Both the position numbers and the translations under genes were made by a program. The notes beneath the pieces were generated by a model that made no database searches, had not been told where the DNA came from, and saw nothing but the letters and a program-made list of their open reading frames with translations. A DNA stretch of 64,000 nucleotides, from contig NC_043019.1 in assembly GCF_006345805.1 (NCBI RefSeq), positions 19,963,360 to 20,027,359 on the forward strand, in the 5' to 3' direction. This DNA comes from Octopus sinensis. Lineage: Eukaryota. This document shows, piece after piece, positions 208-23,509 of the stretch (position 1 is its first letter; each line of letters begins with the position of its first letter).

Positions 208-529
208 CTGGAAAATAAGAGATATAATAAAGTTATGTGTGTGTAAGCACAGGTATGTGTGTGTCTGTGTGTGTTTGTGCATGTGTGTGTGTGTGCTTGT
301 ATAAGTATGTGTGTATATGTGTAAGAATGGGTGCATACATGTGTATGTATATATATAAGCATGGCTGTTTGGTAAGAAGTTTGTTTTCCGGCTTTACAGT
401 TTGTTTGTGGGCTAAATATACAGACAGTACAGTACTTATCTAAAAGGATAGGTTCTACCAATTATAGATTTGATAGGGTTGCCTGGCTTTTCACCAACCT
501 TAATCCTTAGCTTAAGTTTGTCTATTGCA

Positions 530-1290
530 AATGTGTACTTGAAAAACAACAAAGAATTTTGTGATCTGTTGGGTAATTATAAGTTAACTGATAAGCTTAT
601 ATTTATCCGAGAGATCACTAAAGTCTCAAAAGGTTTAAGGATAGCAATTGTGTTCACTTTAATGCTTATTTGCAATATTTCGACACATTTTGTTTTCTGA
701 AAACTACTGTTATTTGTGTGATCTCTTAACTTAACTGAATGATAATAAGATTATATTTAACCAAGAGATCACTAAAGTCTCAAAGTTTTCAGGATACAAA
801 ATGTGTCAAAATATTGCAAAAAAGTGTTAAAAAACAACAAATTTTAATTAGCAATTGTGTTCACTTTTTTATGTTTATTTGCAATATATTGACACATTTT
901 ATTTTCTGAACACTTTATTGACTTGATTGATATCTTGGGTAAATTTATGTTAATTGATTGTTAGCTTATATTTATCCAAGAGGTCACAAAAATCTCAAAA
1001 GTTTTCCGGTTAGAAAATGTCAAAATATTAAAAATGTGTACTTGAAAAACAACAAAAAATTTAGTGATCTGTTAGGTAAATATAAGTAAACTGATTGATA
1101 ATAAGATTATATTTATCCAAGAGATCACTAAAGTCTCAAAAGTTTTAAGGATAGAAAGTGTGTCAAAATATTGCAAATACGTACTGAAAAACAAATTTGA
1201 ATTAGCAATTGTGTTCACTTTTATATGCTTATTTGCAATATTTCAACACACTTTTTATCCTTAAACCTATCAATCAGTTAACTTATATAT
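530..1290. repeat. Degenerate direct and inverted (fold-back) repeat mosaic
   Basis: About 4 diverged copies of tatatttatccaagagatcactaaagtctcaaaag (~598, ~752, ~968, ~1108). Inverted pairs at 1060-1085/1107-1132, 1144-1179/1230-1265 and 1081-1100/1268-1287. Confidence 0.75.
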
Positions 1291-4200
1291 AGATAATTAC
1301 TATTCTTCTATAAATGAAATTGTGTTTAATTAGGCCCTTTTTTTGCAATGATTACAATGGGAATGACATTTGAAGAAGTTAATGTAATTAAAATGGCAAG
1401 GACATCATAAAAGTCGTTATAAATTTATTCAAATAGATATTGATAATTACTATTCCTCTATTAATGAAATTGTGTTTAATAAGGCACTTATTTTTGCAAT
1501 GAATAAAATGTGAATGACATTTGAAGAAGTTAATGTACTTAAAATGGCTAGGACATCATAAAAGTCGTTATAAATTTATTCAAATAGATATTGATAATTA
1601 CTATTCCTCTATTAATGAAATTGTGATTAATAAGACCCTTATTTTTGCAATGAATAAAGTGGGAATGACATTTGAAGAAGTTAATGTAATTAAAATGGCT
1701 AGGACATCATAAAAATCGTTTTAAATTTATTCAAATAGATATTGATAATTACTATTCTTCTATTAATGAAATTGTGTTTAATAAGGCCCTTATTTTTGAA
1801 ATGAATGAAGTGGGAATGACATTTGAAGAAGTTAATGTAATTAAAATGGCTAGGACATCATAAAAAATCGTTATAAATTTATTCAAATAGATATTGATAT
1901 TTACTATTCTTCTATTAATGAAATTGTGTTTAATAAGGCCCATATTTTTACAATGAATGAAGTGGGAATGACATTTGAAGAAGTTAATGTAATTAAAATG
2001 GCTAGGCCATCATAAAAATCGTTTTAAATTTATTCAAATAGATATTGATAATTACTATTCTTCTATTAATGAAATTGTGTTTAATTAGGCCCTTTTTTTG
2101 CAATGATTACAATGGGAATGACATTTGAAGAAGTTAATGTAATTAAAATGGCAAGGACATCATAAAAGTCGTTATAAATTTATTCAAATAGATATTGATA
2201 ATTACTATTCCTCTATTAATGAAATTGTGTTTAATAAGGCACTTATTTTTGCAATGAATAAAATGTGAATGACATTTGAAGAAGTTAATGTACTTAAAAT
2301 GGCTAGGACATCATAAAAGTCGTTATAAATTTATTCAAATAGATATTGATAATTACTATTCCTCTATTAATGAAATTGTGATTAATAAGACCCTTATTTT
2401 TGCAATGAATAAAGTGGGAATGACATTTGAAGAAGTTAATGTAATTAAAATGGCTAGGACATCATAAAAATCGTTTTAAATTTATTCAAATAGATATTGA
2501 TAATTACTATTCTTCTATTAATGAAATTGTGTTTAATAAGGCCCTTATTTTTGAAATGAATGAAGTGGGAATGACATTTGAAGAAGTTAATGTAATTAAA
2601 ATGGCTAGGACATCATAAAAAAATCGTTTTAAATTTATTCAAATAGATATTGATATTTACTATTCTTCTATTAATGAAATTGTGTTTAATAAGGCCCATA
2701 TTTTTACAATGAATGAAGTGGGAATGACATTTGAAGAAGTTAATGTAATTAAAATGGCTAGGCCATCATAAAAATCGTTTTAAATTTATTCAAATAGATA
2801 TTGATAATTACTATTCTTCTATTAATGAAATTGTGTTTAATTAGGCCCTTATTTTTGCAATGAATAAAATGGGAATGACATTTGAAGAAGTTAATGCAAT
2901 TAAAATGGCTAGGACATCATAAAAATCGTTATAAATTTACTCAGATAGATATTAATATTTACTATTATTCTATTAATGAAATTGTGTTTAATAAGGCCCT
3001 TTTTTTTACAATGAATAAAGTGGGAATGACATTTGAAGAAGTTAATGTAATTAAAATGGCTAGGACATCATAAAAATCGTAATAAATTTATTCAAATAGA
3101 TATTGATAATTACTATTCTTCTATTAATGAAATTGTGTTTAATAAGGCCCTTATTTTTACAATGAATGAAGTGGGAATGACATTTGAAGAAGTTAATGCA
3201 ATTAAAATGGCTAGGACATCATAAAAATCGTAATAAATTTATTCAAATAGATATTGATAATTACTATTCTTCTATTAATGAAATTGTGTTTAATTAGGAA
3301 CTTCTTTTTGCAATGAATAAAGTGGGAATGATATTTGAAGAAGTTAATGTAATTAAAATGGCTAGGACATCATAAAAATCGTTTTACATTTATTCAAATA
3401 GATATTGATATTTACTATTCTTCTATTAATGAAATTGTGTTTAATAAGGCCCTTATTTTTACAATGAATAAAGTGGGAATGACATTTGAAGAAGTTAATG
3501 TAATTAAAATGACTAGGACATCATAAAAAACGTTATAAATTTATTCAAATAGATATTGATATTTACTATTCTTCTATTAATGAAATTGAGTTTAATAAGG
3601 CCCTTATTTTTACAATGAATAAAGTGGGAATGACATTTGAAGAAGTTAATGTAATTAAAATGACTAGGACATCATAAAAATCGTTTTAAATTTATTCAAA
3701 TAGATATTGATGTTTACTATTCTTCTATTAATGAAATTGTGTTTAATAAGGCCCTTATTTTTACAATGAATAAAGTGGGAATGACATTTGAAGAAGTTAA
3801 TGTAATTAAAATGGCTAGGACATCATAAAAATCGTTTTAAATTTATTCAAATAGATATTGATAATTACTATTCTTCTATTAATGAAATTGTGTTTAATAA
3901 GGCCCTTATTTTTACAATGAATGAAGTGGGAATGACATTTGAAGAAGTTAATGTAATTAAAATGGCTAGGACATCATAAAAATCGTTTTAAATTTATTCC
4001 AAAAGACATTGATAATTACTATTCTTCTATTAATGAAATTGTGTTTAATAAGGCCCTTATTTTTGCAATGAATGAAGTGGGAATGACATTTGAAGAAGTT
4101 AATGTAATCAAAATTGCTAGGACATCATAAAAATCGTTATAAATTTATTCACATAGATATTGCTGTTTACTATTCTTCTATTAATGAAATTGTGTTTAAT

Positions 4201-7200
4201 AAGGCCCTTATTTTTACAATGAATGAAGTGGGAATGACATTTGAAGAAGTTAATGTAATTAAAATGGCTAGGACATCATAAAAATCGTTTTAAATTGATT
4301 CAAATAGATATTGATAATTACTATTCTTCTATTAATGAAATTGTGTTTAATAAGGCCCTTATTTTTACAATGAATCAAGTGGGAATGACATTTGAAGAAG
4401 TTAATGTAATTAAAATGGCTAGGACATCATAAAAATCGTTTTAAATTAATTCAAATAGATATTGATAATTACTATTCTTCTATTAATGAAATTGTGTTTA
4501 ATAAGGCCCTTATTTTTACAACGAATGAAGTGGGAATGACATTTGAAGAAGTTAATGTAATTAAAATGGCTAGGACATCATAAAAATCGTTTTAAATTTA
4601 TTCAAAGAGATATTGATAATTACTATTCTTCTATTAATGAAATCGTGTTTAATAAGGCCCATTTTTTTACGATGAATAAAGTTGGAATGACATTTGAAGA
4701 AGTTAATGTTATTAAAATGGCTAGGACATCATAAAAGTCGTTTTAAATTTATTCAAATAGATATTGATAATTACTATTCTTCTATAAATGAAATTGTGTT
4801 TAATAAGGCCCTTATTTTAGCAATGAATAAAGTGGGAATGACATTTGAAGAAGTTAATGTAATTAAAATGGCTAGGAAATCATACAAATCGTTATAGATT
4901 TATTCAAATAGATATTGATAATTACTATTCTTCTTTTAATGAACTTGTGTTTAATAAGGCCCTCATTTTTGCAATGAATAAAGTTGGAATGTCATTTGAA
5001 GAAGTTAATGTAATTAAAATGGCTAGAAAATCATAAAAATCGTTATAAATTTATTCAAATAGATATTGATAATTACTATTCTTCTATTAATGAAATTGTG
5101 TTTAATAAGGCCCTTATTTTAGCAATGAATAAAGTGGGAATGACATTTGAAGAAGTTAATGTAATTAAAATGGCTAGGAAATCATAAAAATCGTTATAAA
5201 TTTATTCAAATAGATATTGATAATTACTATTATTCTTTTAATGAAGTTGTGTTTAATAAGGCCCTCATTTTTGCAATGAATAAAGTGGGAATGACATTTG
5301 AAGAAGTTAATGTAATTAAAATGGCTAGGAAATCATAAAAATCGTTATAAATTTATTCAAATAGATATTGATAATTACTATACTTCTATTAATGAAATTG
5401 TGTTTAATAAGGCTCTTATTTTTTCAATGAATAAAGTGGGAATGACATATGAAGAAGTTAATGTAATTAAAATGGCTAGGACATCATAAAAATCGTTATA
5501 AATTTATTCAAATAGATATTGATAATTACTATTCTTCTATAAATGAAATTGTGTTTAATAAGGCCCTTATTTTTACAATGAATGAAGTGGGAATGACATT
5601 TGAAGAAGTTAATGTAATTAAAATGGCTAGGACATCATAAAAATCGTTTTAAATTTATTCAAAGAGATATTGATAATTACTATTCTTCTATTAATGAAAT
5701 CGTGTTTAATAAGGCCCATTTTTTTACAATGAATAAAGTGGGAATGACATTTGAAGAAGTTAATGTAATTAAAATGGCTAGGACATCATAAAAGTCGTTT
5801 TAAATTTATTCAAATAGATATTGATAATTACTATTCTTCTATAAATGAAATTGTGTTTAATAAGGCCCTTATTTTAGCAATGAATAAAGTGGGAATGACA
5901 TTTGAAGAAGTTAATGTAATTAAAATGGCTAGGACATCATAAAAATCGTTATAAATTTATTCAAATAGATATTGATAATTACTATTCTTCTATAAATGAA
6001 ATTGTGTTTAATAAGGCCCTTTTTTTTACAATGAATAAAGTGGGAATGACATTTGAATAAGTTAATGTTATTAAAATGGCTAGGACATCATAAAAGTCGT
6101 TTTAAATTTTTTCAAATAGATATTGATAATTACTATTCTTCTATTAATGTAATTGTGTTTAATAAGGCCCTTATTTTTACAATGAATGAAGTGGGAATGA
6201 CATTTGAAGAGGTTAATGTAATTAAAATGGCTAGGAAATCATAAAAATCGTTATAAATTTATTCAAAGAGATATTGATATTTACTATTCTTCTATTAATG
6301 AAATTCTGTTTAATAAGGCCCTTATTTTTACAAGGAATGAAGTGGGAATGATATTTGAAGAATTTAATGTAATTAAAATAGCTAGGACATCATAAAAATC
6401 GTTATAAATTTATTCAAATAGATATTGATAATTACTATTCTTCTATTAATGAAATTGTGTTTAATAAGGCTCTTATTTTTTCAATGAATAAAGTGGGAAT
6501 GACATTTGAAGAAGTTAATGTAATTAAAATGGCTAGGACATCATAAAATCGTTTTAAATTTATTGAAATAAATATTGATAATTACTATTCTTCTATTAAT
6601 GAAATTGTGTTTAATAAGGCCCTTATTTTTACAATGAATGAAGTGGGAATGACATTTGAAGAAGTTAATGTAATTAAAATGGCTAGGACATCATAAAAAC
6701 CGTTATAAATTTATTCAAATAGATATTGATAATTACTATTCTTCTATTAATGAAATTGTGTTTAATAAGGCCCTTATTTTTACAATGAACAGAGTGGGAA
6801 TGACATTTGAAGAAGTTAATGTAATTAAAACGGCTAGGACATCATAAAAATCGTTATAAATTTATTCAAATAGAAATTGATTGTTACTATTCTTCTATCA
6901 ATGAAATTGTGTTTAATAAGGCCCTTTTTTTTACAATGAATAAAGTGAGAATGACATTTGAAGAAGTTAATGTTATTAAAATGGCTAGGACATCATAAAA
7001 GTCGTTTTAAATTTATTCAAATAGATATTGATAATTACTATTCTTCTATTAATGAAATTGTGTTTAATAAGGCCCTTTTTTTACAATGAATAAAGTGGGA
7101 ATGACATTTGAAGAAGTTAATGTAATTAAAATGGCTAGGACATCATAAAAATCGTTATAAATTTATTCAATAGATATTGATTGTTACTATTCTTCTATTA

Positions 7201-10200
7201 ATGAAATTGTGTTTAATAAGGCCCTTTGTTTTACAATGAATAAAGTGAGAATGACATTTTAAGAAGTTAATGTTATTAAAATGGCTAGAACATCATAAAA
7301 GTCGTTTTAAATTTATTCAAATAGATATTGATAATTACTATTCTTTTATTAATGAAATTGTGTTTAATAAGGCCCTTTTTTTTACAATGAATAAAGTGGG
7401 AATAATATTTGAAGAAGTTAATGCAATTAAAATGGCTAGGACATCATAAAAGTCGTTTTAAATTTATTCAAATAGATATTGATAATTATTATTCTTCTAT
7501 TAATGAAATTGTGTTTAATAAGGCCCTCATTTTTGCAATGAATAAAGTGGGAATGATATTTGAAGAAGATAATGTAATTAAAATGGCTAGGACATCATAA
7601 AAATCGTTATAAATTTCTTCAAATACATATTGATAATTACTATTCTTCTACTAATGAAATTGTGTTTAATAAGGCCCTTATTTTTACAATGAATGAAGTG
7701 GGAATGACATTTGAAGAAGTTAATATAATTAAAATGGCTAGGACATCATAAAAATCGTTATAAATTTATTCAAATAGATATTGATTGTTACTATTCTTCT
7801 ATTAATGAAATTGTGTTTAATAAGGCCCTTTTTTTTACAATGAATAAAGTGGGAATGACATTTGAAGAAGTTAATGTAATTAAAACGGCTAGGACATCAT
7901 AAAAATCGTTATAAATTTATTCAAATAGATATTGATTGTTACTATTCTTCTATCAATGAAATTGTGTTTAATAAGGCCCTTTTTTTTACAATGAATAAAG
8001 TGAGAATGACATTTGAAGAAGTTAATGTAATTAAAATGGCTAGGACATCATAAAAATCGTTATAATTCAAAAAGATATTGATTGTTACTATTCTTCTATT
8101 AATGAAATTGTGTTTAATAAGGCCCTTTGTTTTACAATGAATAAAGTGAGAATGACATTTTAAGAAGTTAATGTTATTAAAATGGCTAGGACATCATAAA
8201 AGTCGTTTTAAATTTATTCAAATAGATATTGATAATTATTATTCTTCTATTAATGAAATTGTGTTTAATAAGGCCCTCATTTTTGCAATGAATAAAGTGG
8301 GAATAATATTTGAAGAAGTTAATGCAATTAAAATGGCTAGGACATCATAAAAATCGTTATAAATTTATTCAAATAGATATTGATAATTACTATTCTTCTA
8401 TTAATGAAATTGTGTTTAATAAGGCATTTATTTTTTCAATGAATAAAGTGGGAATGACATTTGAAGAAGTTAATGTAATTGAAATGGCTAGGACATCATA
8501 AAAATCGTTTTAAATTTATTGAAATAAATATTGATAATTACTATTCTTCTATTAATGAAATTGTGTTTAATAAGGCCCTTTTTTTTACAATGAATGAAGT
8601 GGGAATGACATTTGAAGAAGTTAATGTAATTAAAATGGCTAGGACATCATAAAAATCGTTATAATTCAAATAGATATTGATTGTTACTATTCTTCTATTA
8701 ATGAAATTGTGTTTAATAAGGCCCTTTGTTTTACAATGAATAAAGTGAGAATGACATTTTAAGAAGTTAATGTTATTAAAATGGCTAGGACATCATAAAA
8801 GTCGTTTTAAATTTATTCAAATAGATATTGATAATTATTATTCTTCTATTAATGAAATTGTGTTTAATAAGGCCCTCATTTTTGCAATGAATAAAGTGGG
8901 AATAATATTTGAAGAAGTTAATGGAATTAAAATGGCTAGGACATCATAAAAATCGTTATAAATTTCTTCAAATAGATATTGATAATTACTATTCTTCTAT
9001 TAATGAAATTGTGTTTAATAAGGCTCTTATTTTTGCAATGAATTAAGTGGGAATGATATTTGAAGAAGTTAATGTAATTAAAATAGCTAGGACATCATAA
9101 AAATCGTTATAAATTTATTCAAATAGATATTGATAATTACTATTCTTCTATTAATGAAATTGTGTTTAATAAGGCATTTATTTTTTCAATGAATAAAGTG
9201 GGAATGACATTTGAAGAAGTTAATGTAATTGAAATGGCTAGGACATCATAAAAATCGTTTTAAATTTATTGAAATAAATATTGATAATTACTATTCTTCT
9301 ATTAATGAAATTGTGTTTAATAAGGCCCTTTTTTTTACAATGAATAAAGTGGGAATGACATTTGAAGAAGTTAATGTAATTAAAATGGCTAGGACATCAT
9401 AAAAATCGTTATAATTCAAATAGATATTGATTGTTACTATTCTTCTATTAATGAAATTGTGTTTAATAAGGCCCTTTTTTTTACAATGAATAAAGTGGGA
9501 ATGACATTTGAAGAAGTTAACGTTTTTAAAATGGCTAGGAGATCATAAAAGTCGTTTTAAATTTATTCAAATATATATTGATAATTACTATTCTTCTATT
9601 AATGAAATTGTGTTTAATAAGGCCCTTTTTTTTACAATGAATGAAGTGGGAATGACATTTGAAGAAGTTAATGTAATTAAAATGGCTAGGACATCATAAA
9701 AGTCGTTTTAAATTTATTCAAATAGATATTGATAATTATTATTCTTCTATTAATGAAATTGTGTTTAATAAGGCCCTCATTTTTGCAATGAATAAAGTGG
9801 GAATAATATTTGAAGAAGTTAATGCAATTAAAATGGCTAGGACATCATAAAAATCGTTATAAATTTCTTCAAATAGATATTGATAATTACTATTCTTCTA
9901 TAAATGAAATTGTGTTTAATAAGGCCCTTTTTTTTACAATGAATAAAGTGGGAATGACATTTGAAGAAGTTAATGTTATTAAAATGGCTAGGACATCATA
10001 AAAGTCGTTTTAAATTTTTTCAAATAGATATTGATAATTACTATTCTTCTATTAATGTAATTGTGTTTAATAAGGCCCTTATTTTTACAATGAATGAAGT
10101 GGGAATGACATTTGAAGAGGTTAATGTAATTAAAATGGCTAGGAAATCATAAAAATCGTTATAAATTTATTCAAAGAGATATTGATATTTACTATTCTTC

Positions 10201-13200
10201 TATTAATGAAATTGTGTTTAATAAGGCTCTTATTTTTTCAATGAATAAAGTGGGAATGACATTTGAAGAAGTTAATGTAATTAAAATGGCTAGGACATCA
10301 TAAAAATCGTTTTAAATTTATTCAAATAGATATTGATAATTACTATTCTTCTATTAATGAAATTGTGTTTAATAAGGCCCTTATTTTTACAATGAATAAG
10401 TGGGAATGACATTTGAAGAAGTTAATGTAATTAAAATGGCTAGGACATCATAAAAATCGTTATAAATTTATTCAAATAGATATTGATAATTACTATTCTT
10501 CTATTAATGAAATTGTGTTTAATAAGGCCCTTATTTTTACAATGAATAGAGTGGGAATGACATTTGAAGAAGTTAATGTAATTAAAACGGCTAGGACATC
10601 ATAAAAATCGTTATAAATTTATTCAAATAGATATTGATTGTTACTATTCTTCTATCAATGAAATTGTGTTTAATAAGGCCCTTTTTTTTACAATGAATAA
10701 AGTGAGAATGACATTTGAAGAAGTTAATGTTATTAAAATGGCTAGGACATCATAAAAGTCGTTTTAAATTTATTCAAATAGATATTGATAATTACTATTC
10801 TTCTATTAATGAAATTGTGTTTAATAAGGCCCTTTTTTTACAATGAATAAAGTGTGAATGACATTTGAAGAAGTTAATGTAATTAAAATGGCTAGGACAT
10901 CATAAAAATCGTTATAATTCAAATAGATATTGATTGTAACTATTCTTCTATTAATGAAATTGTGTTTAATAAGGCCCTTTGTTTTACAATGAATAAAGTG
11001 AGAATGACATTTAAGAAGTTAATGTTATTAAAATGGCTAGAACATCATAAAATCGTTTTAAATTTATTCAAATAGATATTGATAATTACTATTCTTTTAT
11101 TAATGAAATTGTGTTTAATAAGGCCCTTTTTTTTACAATGAATAAAGTGGGAATGACATTTGAAGAAGTTAATGTTATTAAAATGGCTAGGACATCATAA
11201 AAGTCGTTTAATTTATTCAAATAGATATTGATAATTACTATTCTTCTATTAATGAAATTGTGTTTAATAAGGCCCTAATTTTTGCAATGAATAAAGTGGG
11301 AATGATATTTGAAGAAGTTAATGTAATTAAAATGGCTAGGACATCATAAAAATCGTTATAAATTTCTTCAATAGATATTGATAATTACTATTCTTCTACT
11401 AAGGAAATTGTGTTTAATAAGGCCCTTATTTTTACAATGAATGAAGTGGGAATGACATTTGAAGAAGTTAATGTTATTAAAATGGCTAGGACATCATAAA
11501 AGTCGTTTTAAATTTATTCAATAGATATTGATAATTATAATATTTTACTATTCTTCTATTAATGAAATGTGTTTAATAAGGCCCTTATTTTTACAATGAA
11601 TGAAGTGGGAATGATATTTGAAGAAGTTAATGTAATTAAAATGGCTAGGACATCATAAAAATCGTTATAAATTTCTTCAAATAGATATTGATAATTACTA
11701 TTCTTCTACTAAGGAAATTGTGTTTAATAAGGCCCTTATTTTTACAATGAATGAAGTGGGAATGACATTTGAAGAAGTTAATGTTATTAAAATGGCTAGG
11801 ACATCATAAAAGTCGTTTTAAATTTATTCAAATAGATATTGATAATTACTATTCTTCTATTAATGAAATTGTGTTTAATAAGGCCCTTATTTTTACAATG
11901 AATGAAGTGGGAATGACATTTGAAGAAGTTAATGTAATTAAAATGGCTAGGACATCATAAAAATCGTTATAAATTTCTTCAAATAGATATTGATAATTAC
12001 TATTCTTCTACTAATGAAATTGTGTTTAATAAGGCCTTATTTTTTCAATGAATGAAGTGGAATGACATTTGAAGAAGTTAATGTATTAAAATGGCTAGGA
12101 CATCATAAAAATCGTTTTAAATTTATTCAAGAGATATTGATAATTACTATTCTTCTATTAATGAAATCGTGTTTAATAAGGCCTTTTTTTACAATGAATA
12201 AAGTGGGAATGACATTTGAAGAAGTTAATGTAATTAAAATGGCTAGGACATCATAAAAGTCGTTTTTAAATAATTCAAATAGATATTGATAGTTACTATT
12301 CTCTATAAATGAAATTGTGTTTAATAAGGCCCTTATTTTAGCAATGAATAAAGTGGGAATGACATTTTAAGAAGTTAATGTTAATTAAAATGGCTAGGAA
12401 ATCATACAAATCGTTATAGATTTATTCAAATAGATATTGATAATTACTATTCTTATTTAATGAAATTGTGTTTAATAAGGCCCTTTTTTGCAATGAATAA
12501 GTTTGGAATGTCATTTGAAGAAGTTAATGTAATTAAAATGGCTAAAATCATAAAAATCGTTATAAATTTATTCAAATAGATATTGATAATTACTATTTTT
12601 CTATTAATGAAATTGTGTTTAATAAGGCCCTTATTTTAGCAATGAATAAAGTGGGAATGACATTTGAAGAAGTTAATGTAATTAAAATGGCTAGGAAATC
12701 ATAAAAATCGTTATAAATTTATTCAAATAGATATTGATAATTACTATACTTCTATTAATGAAATTGTGTTTAATAAGGCTCTTATTTTTTCAATGAATAA
12801 AGTGGGAATGACATTTGAAGAAGTTAATGTATTAAAATGGCTAGGACATCATAAAAGTCGTTATAAATTTATTCAAATAGATATTGATAATTACTATTCT
12901 TCTATTAATGTAATTGTGTTTAATAAGGCCCTTATTTTTACAATGAATGAAGTGGGAATGACATTTGAAGAGGTTAATGTAATTAAAATGCTAGGAAATC
13001 ATAAAAATCGTTATAAATTTATTCAAAGAGATATTGATATTTACTATTCTTCTATTAATGAAATTCTGTTTAATAAGGCCCTTATTTTTACAAGGAATGA
13101 AGTGGGAATGATATTTGAAGAAGTTAATGTAATTAAAATAGCTAGGACATCATAAAAATCGTTATAAATTTATTCAAATAGATATTGATAATTACTATTC

Positions 13201-16200
13201 TTCTATTAATGAAATTGTGTTTAATAAGGCTCTTTTTTCAATGAATAAAGTGGGAATGACATTTGAAGAAGTTAATGTAATTAAAATGGCTAGGACATCA
13301 AAAAATCGTTATAAATTATTCAAATAAATATTGATAATTACTCTACTTCTATTAATGAAATTGTGTTCAATAAGGCCCTTCTTTTTATAATGAATAAAGT
13401 GGAATGACATTTGAAGAAGTTAATGTTATTAAAATGGCTAGGACATCATAAAAGTCGTTATAAATTTATTCAAATAGATATTGATAATTACTCTACTTCT
13501 ATTAATGAAATTGTGTTTAATAAGGCTCTTATTTTTACAATGAATAAAGTGGGAATGACATTTGAAGAAGTTAATGTAATAAAATGGCTAGGAATCATAA
13601 AAATCGTTATAAATTTATTCAAATAGATATTGATAATTACTATTATTCTTTTAATGAAATTGTGTTTAATAAGGCCCTCATTTTTGCAATGAATAAGTGG
13701 GAATGACATTTGAAGAAGTTAATGTAATTAAAATGACTAGGAATCATAAAAATCGTTATAAATTTATTCAATAGATATTGATAATTACTATACTTCTATT
13801 AATGAAATTGTGTTTAATAAGGCTCTTATTTTTTCAATGAATAAAGTGGGAATGACATTTGAATAAGTTAATGTAATTAAAATGGCTAGGACATCATAAA
13901 AATCGTTATAAATTTATTCAAATAGATATTGATAATTACTATTCTTCTATTAATGTAATTGTGTTTAATAAGGCCCTTATTTTTACAATGAATGAAGTGG
14001 GAATGACATGTGAAGAGGTTAATGTAATTAAAATGGCTAGGAAATCATAAAAACCGTTATAAATTTATTCAAAGAGATATTGATATTTACTATTCTTCTA
14101 TTAATGAAATTCTGTTTAATAAGGCCCTTATTTTTACAAGGAATGAAGTGGGAATGATATTTGAAGAAGTTAATGTAATTAAAATAGCTAGGACATCATA
14201 AAAATCGTTATAAATTTATTCAAATAGATATTGATAATTACTATTCTTCTATTAATGAAATGTGTGTTAATAAGGCTCTTATTTTTTCAATGAATAAAGT
14301 GGGAATGACATTTGAAGAAGTTAATGTAATTAAAATGCTAGGACATCATAAAATCGTTTTAAATTTATTGAAATAAATATTGATAATTACTATTCTTCTA
14401 TTAATGAAATTGTGTTTAATAAGGCCCTTATTTTTACAATGAATAGAGTGGGAATGACATTTGAAGAAGTTAATGTAATTAAAACGGCTAGGACATCATA
14501 AAAATCGTTATAAATTTATTCAAATAGATATTGATTGTTACTATTCTTCTATCAATGAAATTGTGTTTAATAAGGCCCTTTTTTTTACAATGAATAAAGT
14601 GAGAATGACATTTGAAGAAGTTAATGTTATTAAAATGGCTAGGACATCATAAAAGTCGTTTTAAATTTATTCAAATAGATATTGATAATTACTATTCTTC
14701 TATTAATGAAATTGTGTTTAATAAGGCCCTTTTTTTTACAATGAATAAAGTGGGAATGACATTTGAAGAAGTTAATGTAATTAAAACGGCTAGGACATCA
14801 TAAAAATCGTTATAATTCAAATAGATATTGATTGTTACTATTCTTCTATTAATGAAATTGTGTTTAATAAGGCCCTTTGTTTTACAATGAATAAAGTGAG
14901 AATGACATTTTAAGAAGTTAATGTTATTAAAATGGCTAGAACATCATAAAAGTCGTTTTAAATTTATTCAAATAGATATTGATAATTACTATCCTTTTAT
15001 TAATGAAATTGTGTTTAATAAGGCCCTTTTTTTTACAATGAATAAAGTGGGAATGACATTTGAAGAAGTTAATGTTATTAAAATGGCTAGGACATCATAA
15101 AAGTCGTTTTAAATTTATTCAAATAGATATTGATAATTATTATTCTTCTATTAATGAAATTGTGTTTAATAAGGCCCTCATTTTTGCAATGAATAAAGTG
15201 GGAATGATATTTGAAGAAGTTAATGTAATTAAAATGGCTAGGACATCATAAAAATCGTTATAAATTTCTTCAAATAGATATTGATAATTACTATTCTTCT
15301 ACTATTGAAATTGTGTTTAATAAGGCCCTTATTTTTACAATGAATGAAGTGGGAATGACATTTGAAGAAGTTAATGTTATTAAAATGGCTAGGACATCAT
15401 AAAAGTCGTTTTAAATTTATTCAAATAGATATTGATAATTACTATTCTTCTATTAATGAAATTGTGTTTAATAAGGCCCTTATTTTTACAATGAATGAAG
15501 TGGGAATGACATTTGAAGAAGTTAATGTAATTAAAATGGCTAGGACATCATAAAAATCGTTATAAATTTCTTCAAATAGATATTGATAATTACTATTCTT
15601 CTACTAATGAAATTGTGTTTAATAAGGCCCTTATTTTTACAATGAATGAAGTGGGAATGACATTTGAAGAAGTTAATGTTATTAAAATGGCTAGGACATC
15701 ATAAAAATCGTTTTAAATTTATTCAAAGAGATATTGATAATTACTATTCTTCTATTAATGAAATCGTGTTTAATAAGGCCCATTTTTTTACAATGAATAA
15801 AGTGGGAATGACATTTGAAGAAGTTAATGTTATTAAAATGGCTAGGACATTATAAAAGTCGTTTTAAATTTATTCAAATAGATATTGATAATTACTATTC
15901 TTCCATAAATGAAATTGTGTTTAATAAGGCCCTTATTTTAGCAATGAATAAAGTGGGAATGACATTTGAAGAAGTTAATGTAATTAAAATGGCTAGGAAA
16001 TCATACAAATCGTTATAGATTTATTCAAATAGATATTGATAATTACTATTCTTCTTTTAATGAACTTGTGTTTAATAAGGCCCTCATTTTTGCAATGAAT
16101 AAAGTTGGAATGTCATTTGAAGAAGTTAATGTAATTAAAATGGCTAGAAAATCATAAAAATCGTTATAAATTTATTCAAATAGATATTGATAATTACTAT

Positions 16201-19200
16201 TCTTCTATTAATGAAATTGTGTTTAATAAGGCCCTTATTTTAGCAATGAATAAAGTGGGAATGACATTTGAAGAAGTTAATGTAATTAAAATGGCTAGGA
16301 AATCATAAAAATCGTTATAAATTTATTCAAATAGATATTAATAATTACTATTATTCTTTTAATGAAGTTGTGTTTAATAAGGCCCTCATTTTTGCAATGA
16401 ATAAAGTGGGAATGACATTTGAAGAAGTTAATGTAATTAAAATGGCTAGGAAATCATAAAAATCGTTATAAATTTATTCAAATAGATATTGATAATTACT
16501 ATACTTCTATTAATGAAATTGTGTTTAATAAGGCTCTTATTTTTTCAATGAATAAAGTGGGAATGACATTTGAAGAAGTTAATGTAATTAAAATAGCTAG
16601 GACATCATAAAAATCGTTATAAATTTATTCAAATAGATATTGATAATTACTATTCTTCTATTAATGTAATTGTGTTTAATAAGGCCCTTATTTTTACAAT
16701 CAATGAAGTGGGAATGACATTTGAAGAGGTTAATGTAATTAAAATGGCTAGGAAATCATAAAAATCGTTATAAATTTATTCAAAGAGATATTGATAATTA
16801 CTATTCTTCTATTAATGAAATTCTGTTTAATAAGGCCCTTATTTTTACAAGGAATGAAGTGGGAATGATATTTGAAGAAGTTAATGTAATTAAAATAGCT
16901 AGGACATCAAAAAAATCGTTATAAATTTATTCAAATAGATATTGATAATTACTATTCTTCTATTAATGAAATTGTGTTTAATAAGGCCCTTATTTTTACA
17001 ATGAATGAAGTGGGAATGACATTTGAAGAAGTTAATGTAATTAAAATGGCTAGGACATCATAAAAACCGTTACAAATTTATTCAAATAGATATTGATAAT
17101 TACTCTACTTCTATTAATGAAATTGTGTTTAATAAGGCTCTTATTTTTTCAATGAATAAAGTGGGAATGACATTTGAAGAAGTTAATGTAATTAAAATGG
17201 CTAGGAAATCATAAAAATCGTTATAAATTTATTCAAATAGATATTGATAATTACTATTATTCTTTTAATGAAGTTGTGTTTAATAAGGCCCTCATTTTTG
17301 CAATGAATAAAGTGGGAATGACATTTGAAGAAGTTAATGTAATTAAAATGGCTAGGAAATCATAAAAATCGTTATAAATTTATTCAAATAGATATTGATA
17401 ATTACTATACTTCTATTAATGAAATTGTGTTTAATAAGGCTCTTATTTTTTCAATGAATAAAGTGGGAATGACATTTGAAGAAGTTAATGTAATTAAAAT
17501 GGCTAGGACATCATAAAAATCGTTATAAATTTATTCAAATAGATATTGATAATTACTATTCTTCTATTAATGTAATTGTGTTTAATAAGGCCCTTATTTT
17601 TACAATGAATGAAGTGGGAATGACATTTGAAGAGGTTAATGTAATTAAAATGGCTAGGAAATCATAAAAATCGTTATAAATTTATTCAAAGAGATATTGA
17701 TATTTACTATTCTTCTATTAATGAAATTCTGTTTAATAAGGCCCTTATTTTTACAAGGAATGAAGTGGGAATGATATTTGAAGAAGTTAATGTAATTAAA
17801 ATAGCTAGGACATCATAAAAATCGTTATAAATTTATTCAAATAGATATTGATAATTACTATTCTTCTATTAATGAAATTGTGTTTAATAAGGCTCTTATT
17901 TTTTCAATGAATAAAGTGGGAATGACATTTGAAGAAGTTAATGTAATTAAAATGGCTAGGACATCATAAAAATCGTTTTAAATGTATTGAAATAAATATT
18001 GATAATTACTATTCTTCTATTAATGAAATTGTGTTTAATAAGGCCCTTATTTTTACAATGAATGAAGTGGGAATGACATTTGAAGAAGTTAATGTAATTA
18101 AAATGGCTAGGACATCATAAAAACCGTTATAAATTTATTGAAATAGATATTGATAATTACTATTCTTCTATTAATGAAATTGTGTTTAATAAGGCCCTTA
18201 TTTTTACAATGAATAGAGTGGGAATGACATTTGAAGAAGTTAATGTAATTAAAACGGCTAGGACATCATAAAAATCGTTATAAATTTATTCAAATAGATA
18301 TTGATTGTTACTATTCTTCTATCAATGAAATTGTGTTTAATAAGGCCCTTTTTTTTACAATGAATAAAGTGAGAATGACATTTGAAGAAGTTAATGTAAT
18401 TAAAATGGCTAGGACATCATAAAAATCGTTATAATTCAAATAGATATTGATTGTTACTATTCTTCTATTAATGAAATTGTGTTTAATAAGGCCCTTTGTT
18501 TTACAATGAATAAAGTGAGAATGACATTTGAAGAAGTTAATGTTATTAAAATGGCTAGAACATCATAAAAGTCGTTTTAAATTTATTCAAATAGATATTG
18601 ATAATTACTATTCTTTTATTAATGAAATTGTGTTTAATAAGGCCCTTTTTTTTACAATGAATAAAGTGGGAATGACATTTGAAGAAGTTAATGTTATTAA
18701 AATGGCTAGGACATCATAAAAGTCGTTTTAAATTTATTCAAATAGATATTGATAATTACTATTCTTTTATTAATGAAATTGTGTTTAATAAGGCCCTCAT
18801 TTTTGCAATGAATAAAGTGGGAATGACATTTGAAGAAGTTAATGTAATTAAAATGGCTAGGACATCATAAAAATCGTTATAAATTTATTCAAATAGACAT
18901 TGATTGTTACTATTCTTCTATTAATGAAATTGTGTTTAATAAGGCCCTTTGTTACAATGAATAAAGTGGGAATGACATTTGAAGAAGTTAATGTTATTAA
19001 AATGGCTAGGACATCATAAAAATCGTTATAAATTTATTCAAATAGATATTGATAATTACTATTCTTCTATTAATGAAATTGTGTTCAATAAGGCCCTTCT
19101 TTTTATAATGAATAAAGTGGGAATGACATTTGAAGAAGTGAATGTTATTAAAATGGCTAGGACATTATAAAAGTCGTTTTAAATTTATTCAAATAGATAT

Positions 19201-19617
19201 TGATAATTACTATTCTTCTATTAATGAAATTGTGTTTAATAAGGCCCTTATTTCTACAATGAATGAAGTGGGAATTACATTTGAAGAAGTTAATGTTATT
19301 AAAATGGCTAGGACATCATAAAAGTCGTTTTAAATTTATTCAAATAGATATTGATAATTACTATTCTTCTATTAATGAAATTGTGTTTAATAAGGCCCTC
19401 ATTTTTGCAATGAATATAGTGGGAATGACATTTGAAGAAGTTAATGTAATTAAAATGGCTAGGGAATCATAAAAATCGTTATAAATGTATCCGAATAGAT
19501 ATAGATAATTACTATTCTTCTTTTAATGAAATTATGTTTAATAAGGCCCTTATTTTTGCAATGAATAAAATGAGAAAGACATTTGAATAAGTTAATGTAA
19601 TTAAAATGGCTAGGAAA
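1290..19617 (+). repeat. 151-bp tandem satellite (~121 copies) derived from PLE reverse transcriptase coding sequence
   Basis: Unit recurs every 151 bp; identical ORFs at 1521 and 2276 are 755 = 5x151 bp apart. One frame reads KNRYKFIQIDIDNYYSSINEIVFNKALIFAMNKVGMTFEEVNVIKMAR, and the last unit continues into KSLIKYKNKLWARK of the RT at 19606. Confidence 0.97.
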
Positions 19618-20277
19618 TCGCTCATTAAATATAAAAATAAACTATGGGCTAGGAAAGATACTAGGGATTTTTTTGATATACCTTTTGGAGCAACTGATTC
19701 TGCACAAGCTACGGATTTTGTAGGTATTTATCTTTTATCTGAACTCCAATTAGAAAATTTAAAAATAGGGGGTGGTTTATATTGGGATGACTTTCTACTA
19801 ATTACTAAGAATCGCACTAATAGCAACCTAGAAGTATATAAGAAAAAACTTTATAGTTTCTTTAAAAGATATGGTTTAAGTATCACTATATATAATGAGA
19901 ATTTCAATATTAATTATTTAGATGTTAATTTTAATCTAATTACATGTAAAACACAACCATATCATAAACTTAATGAGAACCTTAGATATATAAATGTTAA
20001 TAGTAATCACCCACCATCAATTAAAATATCGTTGATTAATAATATTAGTAAACGTATATCATTACTTTCTTATGATTTAGAGATTTTTAATATACATGCT
20101 CCTTATTATAATGAGGCCATTAGAGAGGTAGGTTACAATAGTAATATTAAATTTTTTACTAAAAATAAAGATAAAGCTAGAACTAATAAAATTAGAGATA
20201 AAAATATTAATAATAATTATAATTTTGTTAGAAATATGGTAAAAATATTAGAAATTATAAAAATAAAAATAATATAA
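19606..20277 (+). pseudogene. PLE reverse transcriptase segment (motif B through thumb)
   Basis: 223-aa open frame; catalytic YWDD at 19780-19791 where YRDD is typical. Confidence 0.9.
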
Positions 20278-20479
20278 ATAAAAATAAGAATTAAAATAAA
20301 AATAAAAATAATAATAATAATAATAAAAATAAAAATAAAATTAATAACTTTAATAATTCTTTAAATGTTGATTATAAATATAAATCTGATAATAATAATA
20401 ATATTAATATGATAAAGAAATATAATTACAACAATAATAATGACAGTTTTAATAATAATAAGAAGGAAAATAAGAATTA

Positions 20480-21180
20480 AATTTGGTTAATAGTCCCTTA
20501 TGGTGCTCAAGTTAAAACGAATATTATTAAAGAGATTTTAGATATTATTGAACTATTTATTCGAGATAATCGTAAATATAAAAACATTTTCTGTAGTAAT
20601 AATTTTGGAGTAGGTAATTCCACCACTAATAGTGTAGGTAACATTATTTCTTCTTTTAACGAATTTAAACTGAATAATTTTTATAAAAATAAATTATTTA
20701 ATAATACCAATAATAAAGACAAGACACTAATTAACTGTACATGTAGAGATAAATCTAAATGTAAATTAAATAATAAATGTGATACTAATGATGTAGTGTA
20801 TAAATGTATAGTTACATAAGAATATTAAGAATAATAATAACTCAAACGCGATATATATAGGGTCCACTTCCTCTAAAATAAAATTAAGAATCGCACAACA
20901 TTTGAATTCATTTAAAAATAAAAACTTAATTAACTCCACTGGACTTAGCAAGTACATTTGGAGACTTAAATCCCAAAATATTAATTATAATTTATCTTGG
21001 GAAATAATTAGTAAAACTAAATCATATACTATAGGAGCGAATTTTTGTTATTTGTGCTCTAATGGGTTTAAGGAAATTTTATTTTATAAGCATGATAATT
21101 TACTGAATATCTGTGATGAGCGCAAAATAAAATGCAGACACAAGTTACTTTACTTTTATAATACATTTCTTGATAAATAA
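20480..21180 (+). pseudogene. PLE linker and GIY-YIG endonuclease segment
   Basis: Manual translation across a frameshift near 20817; track ORF 20902-21180 is its C-terminal part. Confidence 0.88.
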
Positions 21181-21619
21181 TAATTATTTATTAGCCTTAA
21201 TTAGCTCCCTATTTATTGTTTTATGTAATAGTATTATAAATATACCAGGTGATTTGTAGTACATATTATAATAGTTTATTTCAGTTATTTAGGTTCTGTT
21301 TTTAATTATAGTTAGATTATAGATGGTTTTCCATTTTATTACTAAATAATAAATATTTAATGGTTTATTGAATATTGAGTCTGGTAAGTTACAATTTTAT
21401 TTATTTTATATATTTTGTTATATTTCTATTATTACTTCGTTAAATTATAATTTTGTTATATTAATCTATTTGTATGTAATCTCTTTATATTTGAAATATA
21501 GTTGTTTATTTAATCCATTTTATTTAATATAGAAGTATAGATTAGTAGATTAATTTTTTAGATTTAACTTAATATTTACCTCTATTTTGTATTGTAGTAT
21601 GATTATAGACATTTATATA

Positions 21620-21990
21620 TCTATTTATTTATAATATATGTGGATGTGTGTGTTTGTATATATGTGTAATTGATGATGTGTGTATATATATATATATATA
21701 TGTATATACATTTATTTATTTGTATGTGTGTGGGTGTGTATATATTGGTGTAAGTGTATATATTGAGTATTGTATGTATGTACATGTATGTATGAGTGTG
21801 CATATGTGTATGGGTGTAAGTGTGTGTATATATGTGTGTATATATGTATATGAATGTATGTGTGTATGTATGTGTATATGTGTATGTATATGTATATGTA
21901 TGTATATGTGTATATGTGTATATATATGTATATATATATGTATATGTATGGATATTTTCTTATATATTTATGTATACGTATGTATAGTTT
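21620..21990. repeat. Compound TG/TA/TATG microsatellite
   Basis: Direct inspection. Confidence 0.95.
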
Positions 21991-23123: not shown

Positions 23124-23171
23124 CACCTGATGAATGACTGCGACTCAAAAATTTGAGAAACGATCGTAGTG
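23124..23171 (+). ncRNA. Minimal type I hammerhead ribozyme-like motif, stem II imperfect
   Basis: cac-CTGATGA-atgactgcgactcaaaaatttga-GAAAC-gatc-GTA-gtg: intact core, 3-bp stem I, palindromic stem III loop, GUA site. Confidence 0.55.

Positions 23172-23384: not shown

Positions 23385-23509
<125 letters not shown>

What the first reader, a model, noticed from the sequence alone, without database searches (positions are those of the whole stretch)
1290..21180. An 18-kb satellite made from the RT motif A segment of a Penelope-like element, still attached to its parent
Seen: ~121 head-to-tail 151-bp units, each encoding the RT motif A region (KNRYKFIQIDIDNYYSSINEIVFNKAL...KMAR). The last unit continues into the remaining RT and GIY-YIG. 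The parent's upstream part is absent, so the array sits at the 5' truncation point. The unit is 3n+1 with a TAA at each junction, so it is non-coding. The terminal unit (~19460-19605) is the most diverged, and junction variants aggAAatc match the parent AGG AAA TC better than the majority aggACatc. Known: PLE RTs are related to telomerase and make partial tandems by template jumping; TE-derived satellites are often described from termini or UTRs. Inference: the seed may be repeated re-copying of one 151-nt window of the element's own RNA, later amplified by recombination. The near-nucleosome-length AT-rich unit could act as heterochromatic or centromeric DNA, or as an anti-PLE small-RNA source.
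Basis: partly seen in the sequence, partly recalled or inferred. Interest (0 to 1): 0.82.

Follow-up and report, generated by a model that had tools for sequence, protein, structure and literature searches.

The report
Tandem array born from dead retrotransposon
An 18-kb block of 151-bp repeats really is a piece of a retrotransposon's reverse-transcriptase gene copied about 122 times next to the broken element it came from, but it occurs at one place only in the genome and looks like an ordinary by-product of DNA recombination.

Summary
Window 1284-19619 carries 121 full 151-bp units and one partial unit, head to tail. Each unit is the RT motif A segment of an AT-rich retroelement, and the last unit runs straight into the rest of a degenerate copy (RT remainder, GIY-YIG, 3' region, ending in a (TA)n tract at about 23392). 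The parent is a Penelope-like element of the Hydra clade: DKT motif, CxCx5C linker, no CC between GIY and YIG, (TA)n at 3' ends, pseudo-LTRs, and an RT fold closest to telomerase. No hammerhead ribozyme was found. The family is abundant in this 2.7-Gb genome, probably an octopus.

The unit-to-unit junction occurs 112 times in the genome and all 112 are in this array. It is therefore a single-locus array born in place, not a dispersed satellite.

Units differ by 6.1% on average, but blocks of 3-6 units recur at 0-1.5% divergence at lags 5, about 25, about 50 and about 75. That is the mark of unequal exchange. The 120 interior units form one clade, and the terminal unit groups with dispersed copies.

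Whether the seed was an RT template jump or a DNA duplication cannot be decided. The junction is blunt and the left unit is truncated. Nothing supports a function. This is a new example of a known process.

The parts
523..1283 (.). Left flank. Degenerate units, partly inverted, of an unrelated dispersed tandem-repeat family (about 141-bp unit; TRF reports a 209-bp period here). They abut the array.
   Evidence: TRF. Self-BLAST shows direct and inverted copies only within 523-1291. The genome search finds arrays of this family on at least 9 chromosomes. An array of at least 11 kb lies 8-19 kb upstream.
1284..1406 (+). Partial first unit (m000). It starts at about unit position 28-36, inside a TATATA stretch shared with the flank.
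   Evidence: BLAST to full-length copies starts at 1284, 27 nt into the unit. Its nearest unit is m005, with 3 differences.
1407..19468 (+). 120 complete interior units of about 151 bp. Each unit starts ATAAAAATCG and ends ..GGCTAGGA(C/A)ATC.
   Evidence: Mean divergence from the array consensus is 3.6% and mean pairwise divergence is 6.1%. Block duplications are shown. The units form one clade that excludes all dispersed copies.
19469..19619 (+). Terminal unit (m121). This is the parent copy's own motif A segment. It has an in-frame TAA at 19588-19590.
   Evidence: It has 12 differences from the array consensus and carries the family state at all 3 sites where the array consensus differs from the family consensus. 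In the tree it groups with a dispersed copy (L037).
19620..21180 (+). Rest of the parent ORF, degenerate. It holds RT motifs B-E and thumb, an Asn-rich low-complexity linker, the CxCx5C linker and the GIY-YIG endonuclease. There are at least 2 frameshifts and several stops.
   Evidence: tblastn of an open copy's ORF gives three pieces: 19450-20229 (frame 1), 20238-20816 (frame 3) and 20797-21174 (frame 1). Pfam GIY-YIG scores E=7.2e-5 on 20812-21180.
21181..23392 (+). [quoted passage not shown] The last part (about 22396-23392) is the segment that is repeated as a pseudo-LTR at both ends of full-length copies.
   Evidence: BLAST to L014 matches both pLTR copies. The conserved 3' terminus ..CCCTAATATTTATTATTA is shown.
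23393..23509 (.). (TA)n microsatellite at the element's 3' end, the likely target site. Unrelated flank follows, starting GGGGAGGGGCAGC.
   Evidence: TRF reports (AT)69 at 23377-23509. The 3' termini examined in L014, L012 and L043 likewise run into TA-rich repeats.

Best explanation
A copy of an abundant, very AT-rich Hydra-clade Penelope-like retrotransposon inserted at a (TA)n tract and decayed.

Inside this dead copy, a 151-bp stretch of the RT gene became tandemly duplicated. This stretch holds the motif A strand with the catalytic Asp and the two helices after it. The junction is blunt: ..GGAAATC joined to ATAAAAATCG...

Once two copies lay side by side, out-of-register exchange between sister chromatids or homologues, or replication slippage, added and homogenised units. 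This happened first unit by unit and later in blocks of about 5 and about 25 units, giving about 122 units (18.3 kb).

The right edge unit stayed outside the homogenisation and kept the ancestral sequence.

The 5' part of the element and the first 30 or so bases of the leftmost unit were lost. Either a rearrangement with the neighbouring 141-bp satellite removed them, or they were never integrated.

The array codes for nothing and most likely has no function. It is a locus-specific proto-satellite.

Shown: the origin, in-place birth, uniqueness, block-wise growth and non-coding state. Inferred: the DNA-level nature of the first duplication, how the 5' part was lost, and neutrality.
For: Origin from the element:
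- The unit occurs once in each of many dispersed copies, 91-98% identical, with normal RT sequence on both sides.
- The last unit is continuous with the parent remainder at the exact family coordinate.

Uniqueness:
- The junction is found only in this array: 109 of 109 hits at up to 1 mismatch and 112 of 112 at up to 3 mismatches, with none on the reverse strand.

Growth by recombination:
- Most units have a nearest neighbour at 0-1% divergence, typically lying 5, 24-26, 50-51 or 74-76 units away, against a mean pairwise divergence of 6.1%.
- Runs of 3-6 consecutive units are shared at up to 1.5% divergence.

Single origin and edge effect:
- Interior units share derived states absent from all 24 dispersed copies: C at position 148 in 97 of 121 units, and A or T at position 90 in 87 of 121.
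- m001-m120 form one clade, while m121 sits with dispersed copies.
- The edge units are the most diverged.

Rearranged surroundings:
- The left flank is a rearranged, partly inverted piece of another satellite.

Seeds of this kind exist elsewhere:
- Another copy of the same family carries a simple 250-bp x2.1 internal duplication.

Identity of the parent.
Against: - The first junction has no microhomology. Simple replication slippage would usually leave some. The 250-bp duplication in L011 does have an imperfect direct repeat of about 12 nt.
- The leftmost unit is truncated and nothing of the element lies upstream. A purely DNA-level history therefore needs one extra event, a deletion or rearrangement. 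An RT-made insertion with 5' truncation would explain this without it.
- No reads were available, so the copy number and the 0%-divergent blocks rest on the assembly alone.
- Clade support in the unit tree is low because there are only 151 sites.
Confidence: 0.68

Rival explanations
1. The array, or at least its first junctions, was made by the element's own RT during integration.

In this model the RT copied the 3' part of the RNA and reached an RNA end at unit position 1. It then jumped end-to-end onto the 3' end of a 151-nt RNA fragment, or ran around a 151-nt circular RNA. It did this repeatedly, stopped mid-unit, and the cDNA was joined to the chromosome. Recombination reshaped the array afterwards.
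For: - The junction is blunt with no microhomology (and direct reading of the sequence).
- The leftmost unit is truncated at an arbitrary phase, at a short TA-rich overlap with the flank, as at 5'-truncated retrotransposon junctions.
- There is no upstream element sequence within 20 kb.
- The RT fold is closest to telomerase.
- PLEs characteristically form partial tandems, and PLE-linked hammerhead repeats are thought to spread by a rolling-circle route (PMC8557442; bioRxiv 10.64898/2026.07.22.740005).
Against: - None of the several dozen dispersed copies whose matches were scored, and no place in the genome, carries this junction even once.
- The unit has no ribozyme and no unusual RNA fold (z = +0.84), so nothing explains two precise RNA ends.
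- The present structure is dominated by block duplications, so a large one-shot product is not required.
- The left flank does not resume on the right of the element, so no target-site duplication or clean insertion site can be shown.
Confidence: 0.15
2. The array is largely an assembly artefact. A short tandem duplication was inflated by the assembler to about 122 units.
For: - Some blocks are 0% diverged (m1-3 against m6-8, and others).
- The assembly has gaps nearby (100 N at window 46385-46484, and one in L057).
- No reads could be checked.
Against: - There is no gap inside the array.
- Units differ by 6.1% on average, with many distinct substitution and indel variants (145-159 bp) arranged in a non-periodic order. 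Collapse or stutter does not produce this.
- Both array edges are unique junctions.
Confidence: 0.07
3. The array is a functional repeat: part of a centromere or heterochromatin block, or a source of small RNAs against the PLE family.
For: - The unit is close to nucleosome length and AT-rich (24% GC).
- The array lies 8-19 kb from an array of at least 11 kb of a 141-bp satellite, which occurs in one main cluster on each of at least 9 chromosomes.
- The unit is 91-98% identical to many dispersed copies of the family, so transcripts could in principle feed silencing.
Against: - It is a single 18-kb locus on one chromosome.
- There is no conserved structure or coding capacity.
- No expression, small-RNA or chromatin data are available.
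- The variation pattern fits neutral turnover.
Confidence: 0.07

Closest known systems
Satellite or tandem DNAs derived from coding parts of retrotransposons (LINE-1 ORF2 to PROsat in Phodopus; CR1 ORF2 to the HinfI repeat in chicken; gag to E3900 in rye), as listed in the review PMC9659126
   Same: A fragment of a TE open reading frame becomes the monomer of a non-coding tandem array and is then amplified by unequal exchange.
   Different: Here the donor is a Penelope-like element, which the review does not mention. The array is at one locus only and is still physically joined to the donor copy, so the founding junction can be read directly.
Satellites born from tandem repeats inside LTR retrotransposons (Ogre 3' UTR to PisTR-A; Lathyrus satellites; PMC7004042)
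   Same: A short tandem duplication inside an element acts as a seed that later expands into long arrays.
   Different: Those seeds lie in hypervariable non-coding regions and are spread by retrotransposition before they expand. Here the seed is in the RT catalytic core and was never spread: the junction is unique in the genome.
PLE pseudo-LTR / hammerhead tandem repeats (non-LTR retrozymes; PMC4209133, bioRxiv 10.64898/2026.07.22.740005)
   Same: Tandem arrays a few hundred bp in unit length that descend from Penelope-like elements.
   Different: Retrozymes derive from the pLTR, carry a self-cleaving hammerhead, and are dispersed and mobile. This unit comes from the RT gene, has no ribozyme, and sits at one locus.
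Hydra clade of C-terminal EN+ Penelope-like elements (Craig et al. 2021, PMC8557442)
   Same: The parent family shows the DKT motif, RWK in its relatives (KWK in this family), the CxCx5C linker, no CC between GIY and YIG, CxxC and CxH around the catalytic E/N, (TA)n targets, pLTRs and tandem or inverted insertions.
   Different: - No canonical hammerhead was detected.
- Same-orientation copies lie 5.4-5.6 kb apart (suggesting a unit of about that size) with a 2.2-kb 3' region, against 'generally <3 kb' for the clade.
- The composition is extreme (21-32% GC in the loci examined) with an Asn-rich linker.
- The copy number is very high: 14,230 first-look candidates.

Membership tests
Penelope-like element (PLE) | Reverse transcriptase whose closest relatives are telomerase RTs | tested here: met
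   The AF2 model of the RT core has pLDDT 92.7. The top Foldseek PDB hits are TERTs: 3du5 at E=4.3e-11, then Candida TERTs, with Tetrahymena, human and yeast TERTs lower in the list. DRT, retron, group II and LINE RTs also appear. Sequence-only searches (Pfam, PDB) gave nothing.
Penelope-like element (PLE) | GIY-YIG endonuclease in the same ORF (C-terminal in canonical EN+ clades) | tested here: met
   Pfam PF01541 scores E=7.2e-5, above its cut-off, on window 20812-21180. Open copies carry RT and EN in one frame of 748-859 aa.
Penelope-like element (PLE) | Pseudo-LTRs and partial tandem or inverted arrangement of copies | tested here: met
   In L014 the roughly 1-kb 3' segment is repeated upstream of the 5' region. 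L012 has inverted partial copies. Same-orientation copies lie 5.4-5.6 kb apart.
Penelope-like element (PLE) | Hammerhead ribozyme motif in the pLTR (canonical PLEs, including Hydra according to PMC8557442) | tested here: not met
   No Rfam hammerhead hit at the gathering threshold in the window, and none at E<=1 in window 19400-23700 or in the searched loci L014 and L043. A conserved CUGANGA..GAAA string lies in the pLTR at window 23127, but it has no canonical helix II. Minimal hammerheads may escape these models.
Hydra clade of PLEs | DKG motif changed to DKT; RWK motif at the N-terminus | tested here: met
   The sequence reads ..VQSDKTRNLY.. with D24 and K25 invariant and T26 in at least 90% of 33 aligned sequences. 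The relatives' consensus is RMRWKAFFF; this family has KWK.
Hydra clade of PLEs | No CCHH: no two Cys between GIY and YIG. Linker CxCx5C. CxxC and CxH flanking the catalytic E/N. | tested here: met
   VVYKCIVT..AVYIGST has a single Cys. The linker is INCTCRDKSKC. CYLC and CRH/CRN are present. These Cys columns are at least 90% conserved in the alignment. The criteria come from PMC8557442 section 11.
Hydra clade of PLEs | Insertion into (TA)n | tested here: met
   The window copy and the 3' termini examined in L014, L012 and L043 end ..CCCTAATATTTATTATTA followed by TA-rich repeats and then unrelated flank.
Hydra clade of PLEs | Placement inside the clade in an RT phylogeny with reference PLEs | not tested
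The assignment rests on motifs only.
Satellite DNA (classical sense) | Long head-to-tail array with homogenised monomers and higher-order blocks | tested here: met
   121.8 units over 18.3 kb, with block repeats at lags 5, about 25, about 50 and about 75.
Satellite DNA (classical sense) | A repeat family present in many arrays or loci, forming a sizeable genome fraction | tested here: not met
   The junction is unique to this locus. 18 kb is about 0.0007% of 2.72 Gb.
Satellite DNA (classical sense) | Heterochromatic or centromeric chromatin state | not testable with these tools
   Only context is available: the neighbouring 141-bp satellite arrays.
Non-LTR retrozyme / hammerhead tandem repeat | Self-cleaving hammerhead in each unit | tested here: not met
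   No hit in the array at the gathering threshold or at E<=5. The unit's RNA fold is not better than shuffles.

The most novel reading that the evidence does not exclude
The founding junctions were made by the Penelope-like RT itself. It would have jumped end-to-end over, or rolled around, a 151-nt fragment of its own mRNA during target-primed reverse transcription. In that case a telomerase-related retrotransposon RT directly wrote a tandem array into a chromosome, and recombination then took it over. This would be a natural case of a satellite born by reverse transcription.
Probability: 0.13. Interest if true: 0.7.

Novelty: new member of a known kind. Interest (0 to 1): 0.4.

Why it matters
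Satellites are usually seen long after their birth, when the donor sequence and the first junction are gone. Here the donor copy, the founding junction, the unhomogenised edge units and the block-wise growth are all readable at one locus. This makes a clean teaching case for the step from transposable element to satellite. To my knowledge it is also the first such case from the coding core of a Penelope-like element, and it is in a cephalopod-type genome.

It does not reveal a new mechanism. Its value would rise if comparison between populations or species showed the stages of growth, or if the RT-made origin could be demonstrated.

The parent family is also worth annotating in its own right. 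It is a very abundant, extremely AT-rich Hydra-clade PLE in which no hammerhead was detected.

Tried and rejected
- Pfam on the RT pieces and on an 859-aa open copy gave no RT family. A sequence search of PDB gave nothing. The RT identity had to be shown by fold and by motifs.
- Rfam at the gathering threshold on the whole window, and in E-value mode on the element, on two full copies and on 1 kb of the array, gave no hammerhead. The only hits were microsatellite-driven miRNA look-alikes. A hand scan for CUGANGA..GAAA found one conserved string with no proper helix II.
- BLAST-type DNA searches of the genome with the monomer or with a junction-spanning 98-mer scored only 39 candidates and did not list the window's own array. 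They could not prove uniqueness, so I used the exhaustive pattern searches instead.
- Search for a target-site duplication or empty site: the left-flank satellite does not resume on the right of the element, and the right flank is unrelated. The (TA)n at the 3' end and TATATA at the 5' end are too simple to count as a duplication.
- A search of the 5.8-billion-protein collection with a junction-spanning 64-aa frame, meant to find the array in independent assemblies, returned no candidates.
- The A at unit position 35 in the partial left unit looked like an ancestral edge state. I set it aside because it lies in the TA-rich overlap with the flank, and because that unit is only 3 differences from m005.
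Full report
**1. The observation**

Tandem Repeats Finder reports a single array at window 1287-19619 with period 151, 121.8 copies, 93% matches and no indel load. I sliced the array on a junction anchor. This gives 121 complete units starting at 1407, preceded by a partial unit at 1284-1406. Eighty-nine unit lengths are exactly 151 bp and the rest are 145-159 bp.

The region has 23-25% GC against 32-46% in the rest of the window. The only assembly gap in the window is at 46385-46484, far from the array.

In the RT frame every unit reads ..KNRYKFIQIDIDNYYSSINEIVFNKAL..EEVNVIKMAR(T/K)S. The unit length is 3n+1, and 114 of 121 junctions read TCA TAA. The longest open frame anywhere in the array is 157 aa, where 146-bp deletion variants restore the phase. 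The maxima in the other five frames are 68-85 aa.

**2. What the unit is**

The 151-bp sequence occurs once each, at 91-98% identity, in many dispersed places in the window's genome. That genome is 2.72 Gb in 13,516 contigs, and the window is C23:19,963,360-20,027,359.

In those places the sequence is embedded in normal coding sequence. Upstream lies ..ITLKDHKDNF..PKVRLICPCKSDLGKLSK.. and downstream lies ..FDIPMGAPDSAQATDLVGIY..GGLYRDDLLL... Two copies have long open frames of 859 and 748 aa, stop to stop. These run from an N-terminal region through the RT, an Asn-rich low-complexity stretch and a Cys-rich linker to a GIY-YIG domain.

A protein search of the genome gave 14,230 first-look candidates. 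All 141 that were scored matched, at 51-100% identity.

Pfam recognises only the GIY-YIG domain (E=7.2e-5). It does not recognise the RT, and neither does a sequence search of PDB.

I aligned the RT core of an open copy with 32 distant relatives (33-46% identity to this RT core) from environmental and invertebrate assemblies. The AlphaFold model built from this alignment has mean pLDDT 92.7. Its best structural matches are telomerase catalytic subunits: Tribolium 3du5 at E=4.3e-11, then Candida TERTs, with Tetrahymena, human and yeast TERTs lower in the list. DRT, retron, group II intron and LINE RTs also appear among the matches.

In the model, the unit covers residues about 150-198. This comprises:
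- the beta strand F157..D161 (F157 is invariant, and D161 is conserved in at least 90% of the aligned sequences);
- the two helices that follow it.

The invariant Y255-R256-D257-D258 lies 96 residues after D161. This is the arrangement of RT motifs A and C. The motif assignment itself is inference from that pattern.

**3. Which element**

The features that Craig et al. (PMC8557442, section 11) give for the Hydra clade of C-terminal EN+ Penelope-like elements are present:
- DKT instead of DKG (..SDKTRN..);
- RWK in the relatives, KWK in this family;
- a CxCx5C linker (INCTCRDKSKC);
- only one Cys between GIY (VVY) and YIG (VYIG), so no CCHH motif;
- CxxC (CYLC) and CxH (CRH) around the catalytic E/N.

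The window copy and the 3' termini examined in L014, L012 and L043 all end ..CCCTAATATTTATTATTA followed by TA-rich repeats and then unrelated flank. Where the same segment lies upstream of an element, it runs on into the 5' region instead. This is the pseudo-LTR / partial-tandem layout of PLEs.

Two things differ from the published description of the clade:
- No hammerhead ribozyme was found by Rfam in the window copy or in the two 10-kb loci searched, L014 and L043.
- The element is larger. Same-orientation copies lie 5.4-5.6 kb apart, which suggests a unit of about that size, and the 3' region is 2.2 kb.

I did not place the RT in a tree with reference PLEs, so the clade assignment rests on motifs.

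The host is probably an octopus. One hit is an Octopus bimaculoides protein. The assembly statistics also match, from memory, an Octopus sinensis assembly; this is untested. PLEs are known to be abundant in octopus genomes (PMC13282606).

**4. The parent copy in the window**

From 19469, homology to full-length copies runs without a break to about 23392-23465 (88-91% identity to L014), ending in the (TA)n tract at 23377-23509.

The remaining ORF is dead. tblastn splits it into 19450-20229 (frame 1), 20238-20816 (frame 3) and 20797-21174 (frame 1), with in-frame stops including TAA at 19588-19590.

Nothing homologous to the element's 5' part or to an upstream pLTR lies in the left flank, elsewhere in the window, or in the 20 kb upstream.

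**5. One locus, born in place**

An exhaustive pattern search for the head-to-tail junction gave these counts:

| Pattern | Mismatches allowed | Whole genome | Window |
|---|---|---|---|
| 29 nt | up to 1 | 109 forward, 0 reverse | 109 |
| 34 nt with four free positions | up to 3 | 112 forward, 0 reverse | 112 |

The reversed-pattern controls gave zero. No other copy of the family, and no other place in the assembly, has even one such junction.

The terminal unit continues into the parent at the exact family coordinate. Together these results show that the array arose at this copy. They also mean that 'satellite' overstates it: this is a single 18.3-kb locus.

**6. How it grew**

Units differ from the array consensus by 3.6% on average and from each other by 6.1%. 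Yet most units have a nearest neighbour at 0-1% divergence, and it typically lies 5, 24-26, 50-51 or 74-76 units away. Runs of 3-6 consecutive units are shared at up to 1.5% divergence at those lags. Examples are m34-39 with m59-64, m23-27 with m97-101, m76-79 with m107-110, and m1-4 with m6-9.

This is the pattern left by out-of-register exchange or by duplication of multi-unit blocks, with a loose period of about 25 units (3.8 kb). A single burst of unit-by-unit copying would not leave it.

The array consensus differs from a consensus of 24 dispersed copies at three sites:

| Unit position | Array consensus | Family consensus |
|---|---|---|
| 35 | T | A |
| 90 | A | G |
| 148 | C | A |

At positions 90 and 148 all 24 dispersed copies carry the family state. 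The terminal unit m121 carries the family state at all three sites. It is the most diverged unit from the array consensus, with 12 of 151 differences.

In a FastTree of all units and dispersed copies, m001-m120 form one clade that contains no dispersed copy. m121 is sister to the chromosome-4 copy, which is also the closest relative of the parent remainder at 94.7% identity. Support on 151 sites is weak, but the picture is coherent: one founder, interior homogenisation, and an edge unit left behind.

**7. The seed and the left edge**

In family coordinates the junction joins ..ATGGCTAGGAAATC to ATAAAAATCGTT... The bases flanking the two breakpoints (..TTAAAG| and |GCTTAT..) share nothing, so the junction is blunt (and direct reading).

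The leftmost unit starts about 28-36 nt into the unit, within a TATATA overlap with the flank. The flank is a rearranged, partly inverted remnant of a different satellite of about 141 bp. That satellite does not resume on the right of the element.

A copy truncated at position about 30 could not by itself supply positions 1-30 to the other units. Two histories remain possible:
- The copy once extended further 5' and a later rearrangement removed that part.
- The first junction(s) were already present when the cDNA was integrated, through RT template jumping followed by 5' truncation.

I cannot separate these with the data at hand. I favour the DNA-level route for four reasons:
- The flank is visibly rearranged.
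- No RNA feature explains two precise ends.
- The junction never appears in any other copy.
- Another copy of the family shows an ordinary 250-bp x2.1 internal duplication, bounded by an imperfect direct repeat of about 12 nt.

I give the RT-made seed about 0.13-0.15.

**8. Function**

Nothing in the sequence suggests a function. There is no coding capacity, no RNA family match, and no fold beyond shuffled controls.

The context is rich in tandem repeats:
- an array of at least 11 kb of the 141-bp satellite lies 8-19 kb upstream;
- a 124-bp array lies at 55758-58706;
- the 141-bp family forms clusters on at least nine chromosomes.

The region may therefore be heterochromatic, but this is context and not evidence for a role of the PLE-derived array.

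**9. Comparison and novelty**

Tandem arrays derived from transposable elements, including from ORF fragments, are on record: L1 ORF2 to PROsat, CR1 ORF2 to HinfI, and gag to E3900 (review PMC9659126). Seeds inside retrotransposons that later expand are well described in plants (PMC7004042).

PLE-derived tandem repeats are also known, but they come from the hammerhead-bearing pLTR (PMC4209133; bioRxiv 10.64898/2026.07.22.740005).

The present case is a new member of this known kind. The donor is the RT catalytic core of a Hydra-clade PLE, the array is at a single locus, and it is still joined to the donor. It is a neat, readable example rather than a new principle.

Noticed in passing
window 523-1283; L057 960-10000 and L058 1-1957 (C23:19,944,320-19,955,316): A 141-bp satellite (..TTATATTTATCCAAGA(T/G)ATCACTAAAGTCTCAAAAG..) forms an array of at least 11 kb, containing an assembly gap, 8-19 kb upstream, with remnants abutting the PLE array. 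The same family forms clusters on at least 9 chromosomes (C7, C11, C15, C19, C25, C26, C27, C29 and C23) and on unplaced contigs, roughly one main cluster per chromosome among the hits scored. It is a candidate pericentromeric or centromeric repeat.
   Followed up: partly
window 55758-58706: A second long tandem array: 124-bp unit, 23.8 copies, 96% matches. It has open frames that repeat ..ILFQDSLLVKKKAVSNLDPRVLHWNFN... Its origin was not examined.
   Followed up: no
window 39979-40638 (-): A fragment of a different Hydra-type PLE with ordinary GC content. It carries ..ITWLDPP..LLDKHF.. and a Cys-rich linker followed by VVYEAEV, and it matches the consensus of the relatives aligned.
   Followed up: no
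L011 9034-9550 (= C4:44,893,033-44,893,549): Another copy of the same PLE family carries a fresh 250-bp x2.1 tandem duplication (98% identity) in its 3' UTR, bounded by an imperfect direct repeat of about 12 nt (AATAGTTT(T)ATTT). It may be a seed of the same kind at an earlier stage.
   Followed up: partly
L043 3485-6064 (-), L044 3045-5291 (-), and family-wide: The parent PLE family is extremely AT-rich (21-32% GC in the loci examined, in a window that is otherwise 32-46% GC). It carries a long Asn-rich low-complexity insert between the RT thumb and the EN linker, and several copies have long open frames (748-859 aa). Its closest relatives in public data are only 32-46% identical.
   Followed up: partly
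window 23127-23160 (+); L014 7654 and 2761 (-): A conserved CUGA(U/A)GA..GAAA string lies in both pLTR copies of the family, about 250 nt from the 3' end. It is not a canonical hammerhead as far as I can see, but it is worth a specialist's look because Hydra PLEs are reported to have HHRs.
   Followed up: partly
window 25061-25873 (-), 31609-32127 (-), 62573-63043 (+): Other transposon remnants: a LINE-type RT fragment, a mariner-like transposase N-terminus and an LTR-retrotransposon RT fragment. Dense microsatellites run throughout 21.6-55 kb. These identities come from reading the translations only and were not searched.
   Followed up: no
window 8050-9545, 10902-13746, 14800, 18419: Units with a recurrent 5-bp deletion (146 bp) and other length variants (145-159 bp) cluster in the middle of the array. 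Where they follow each other, the RT frame stays open across 2-3 units, giving the 157-aa frame.
   Followed up: partly
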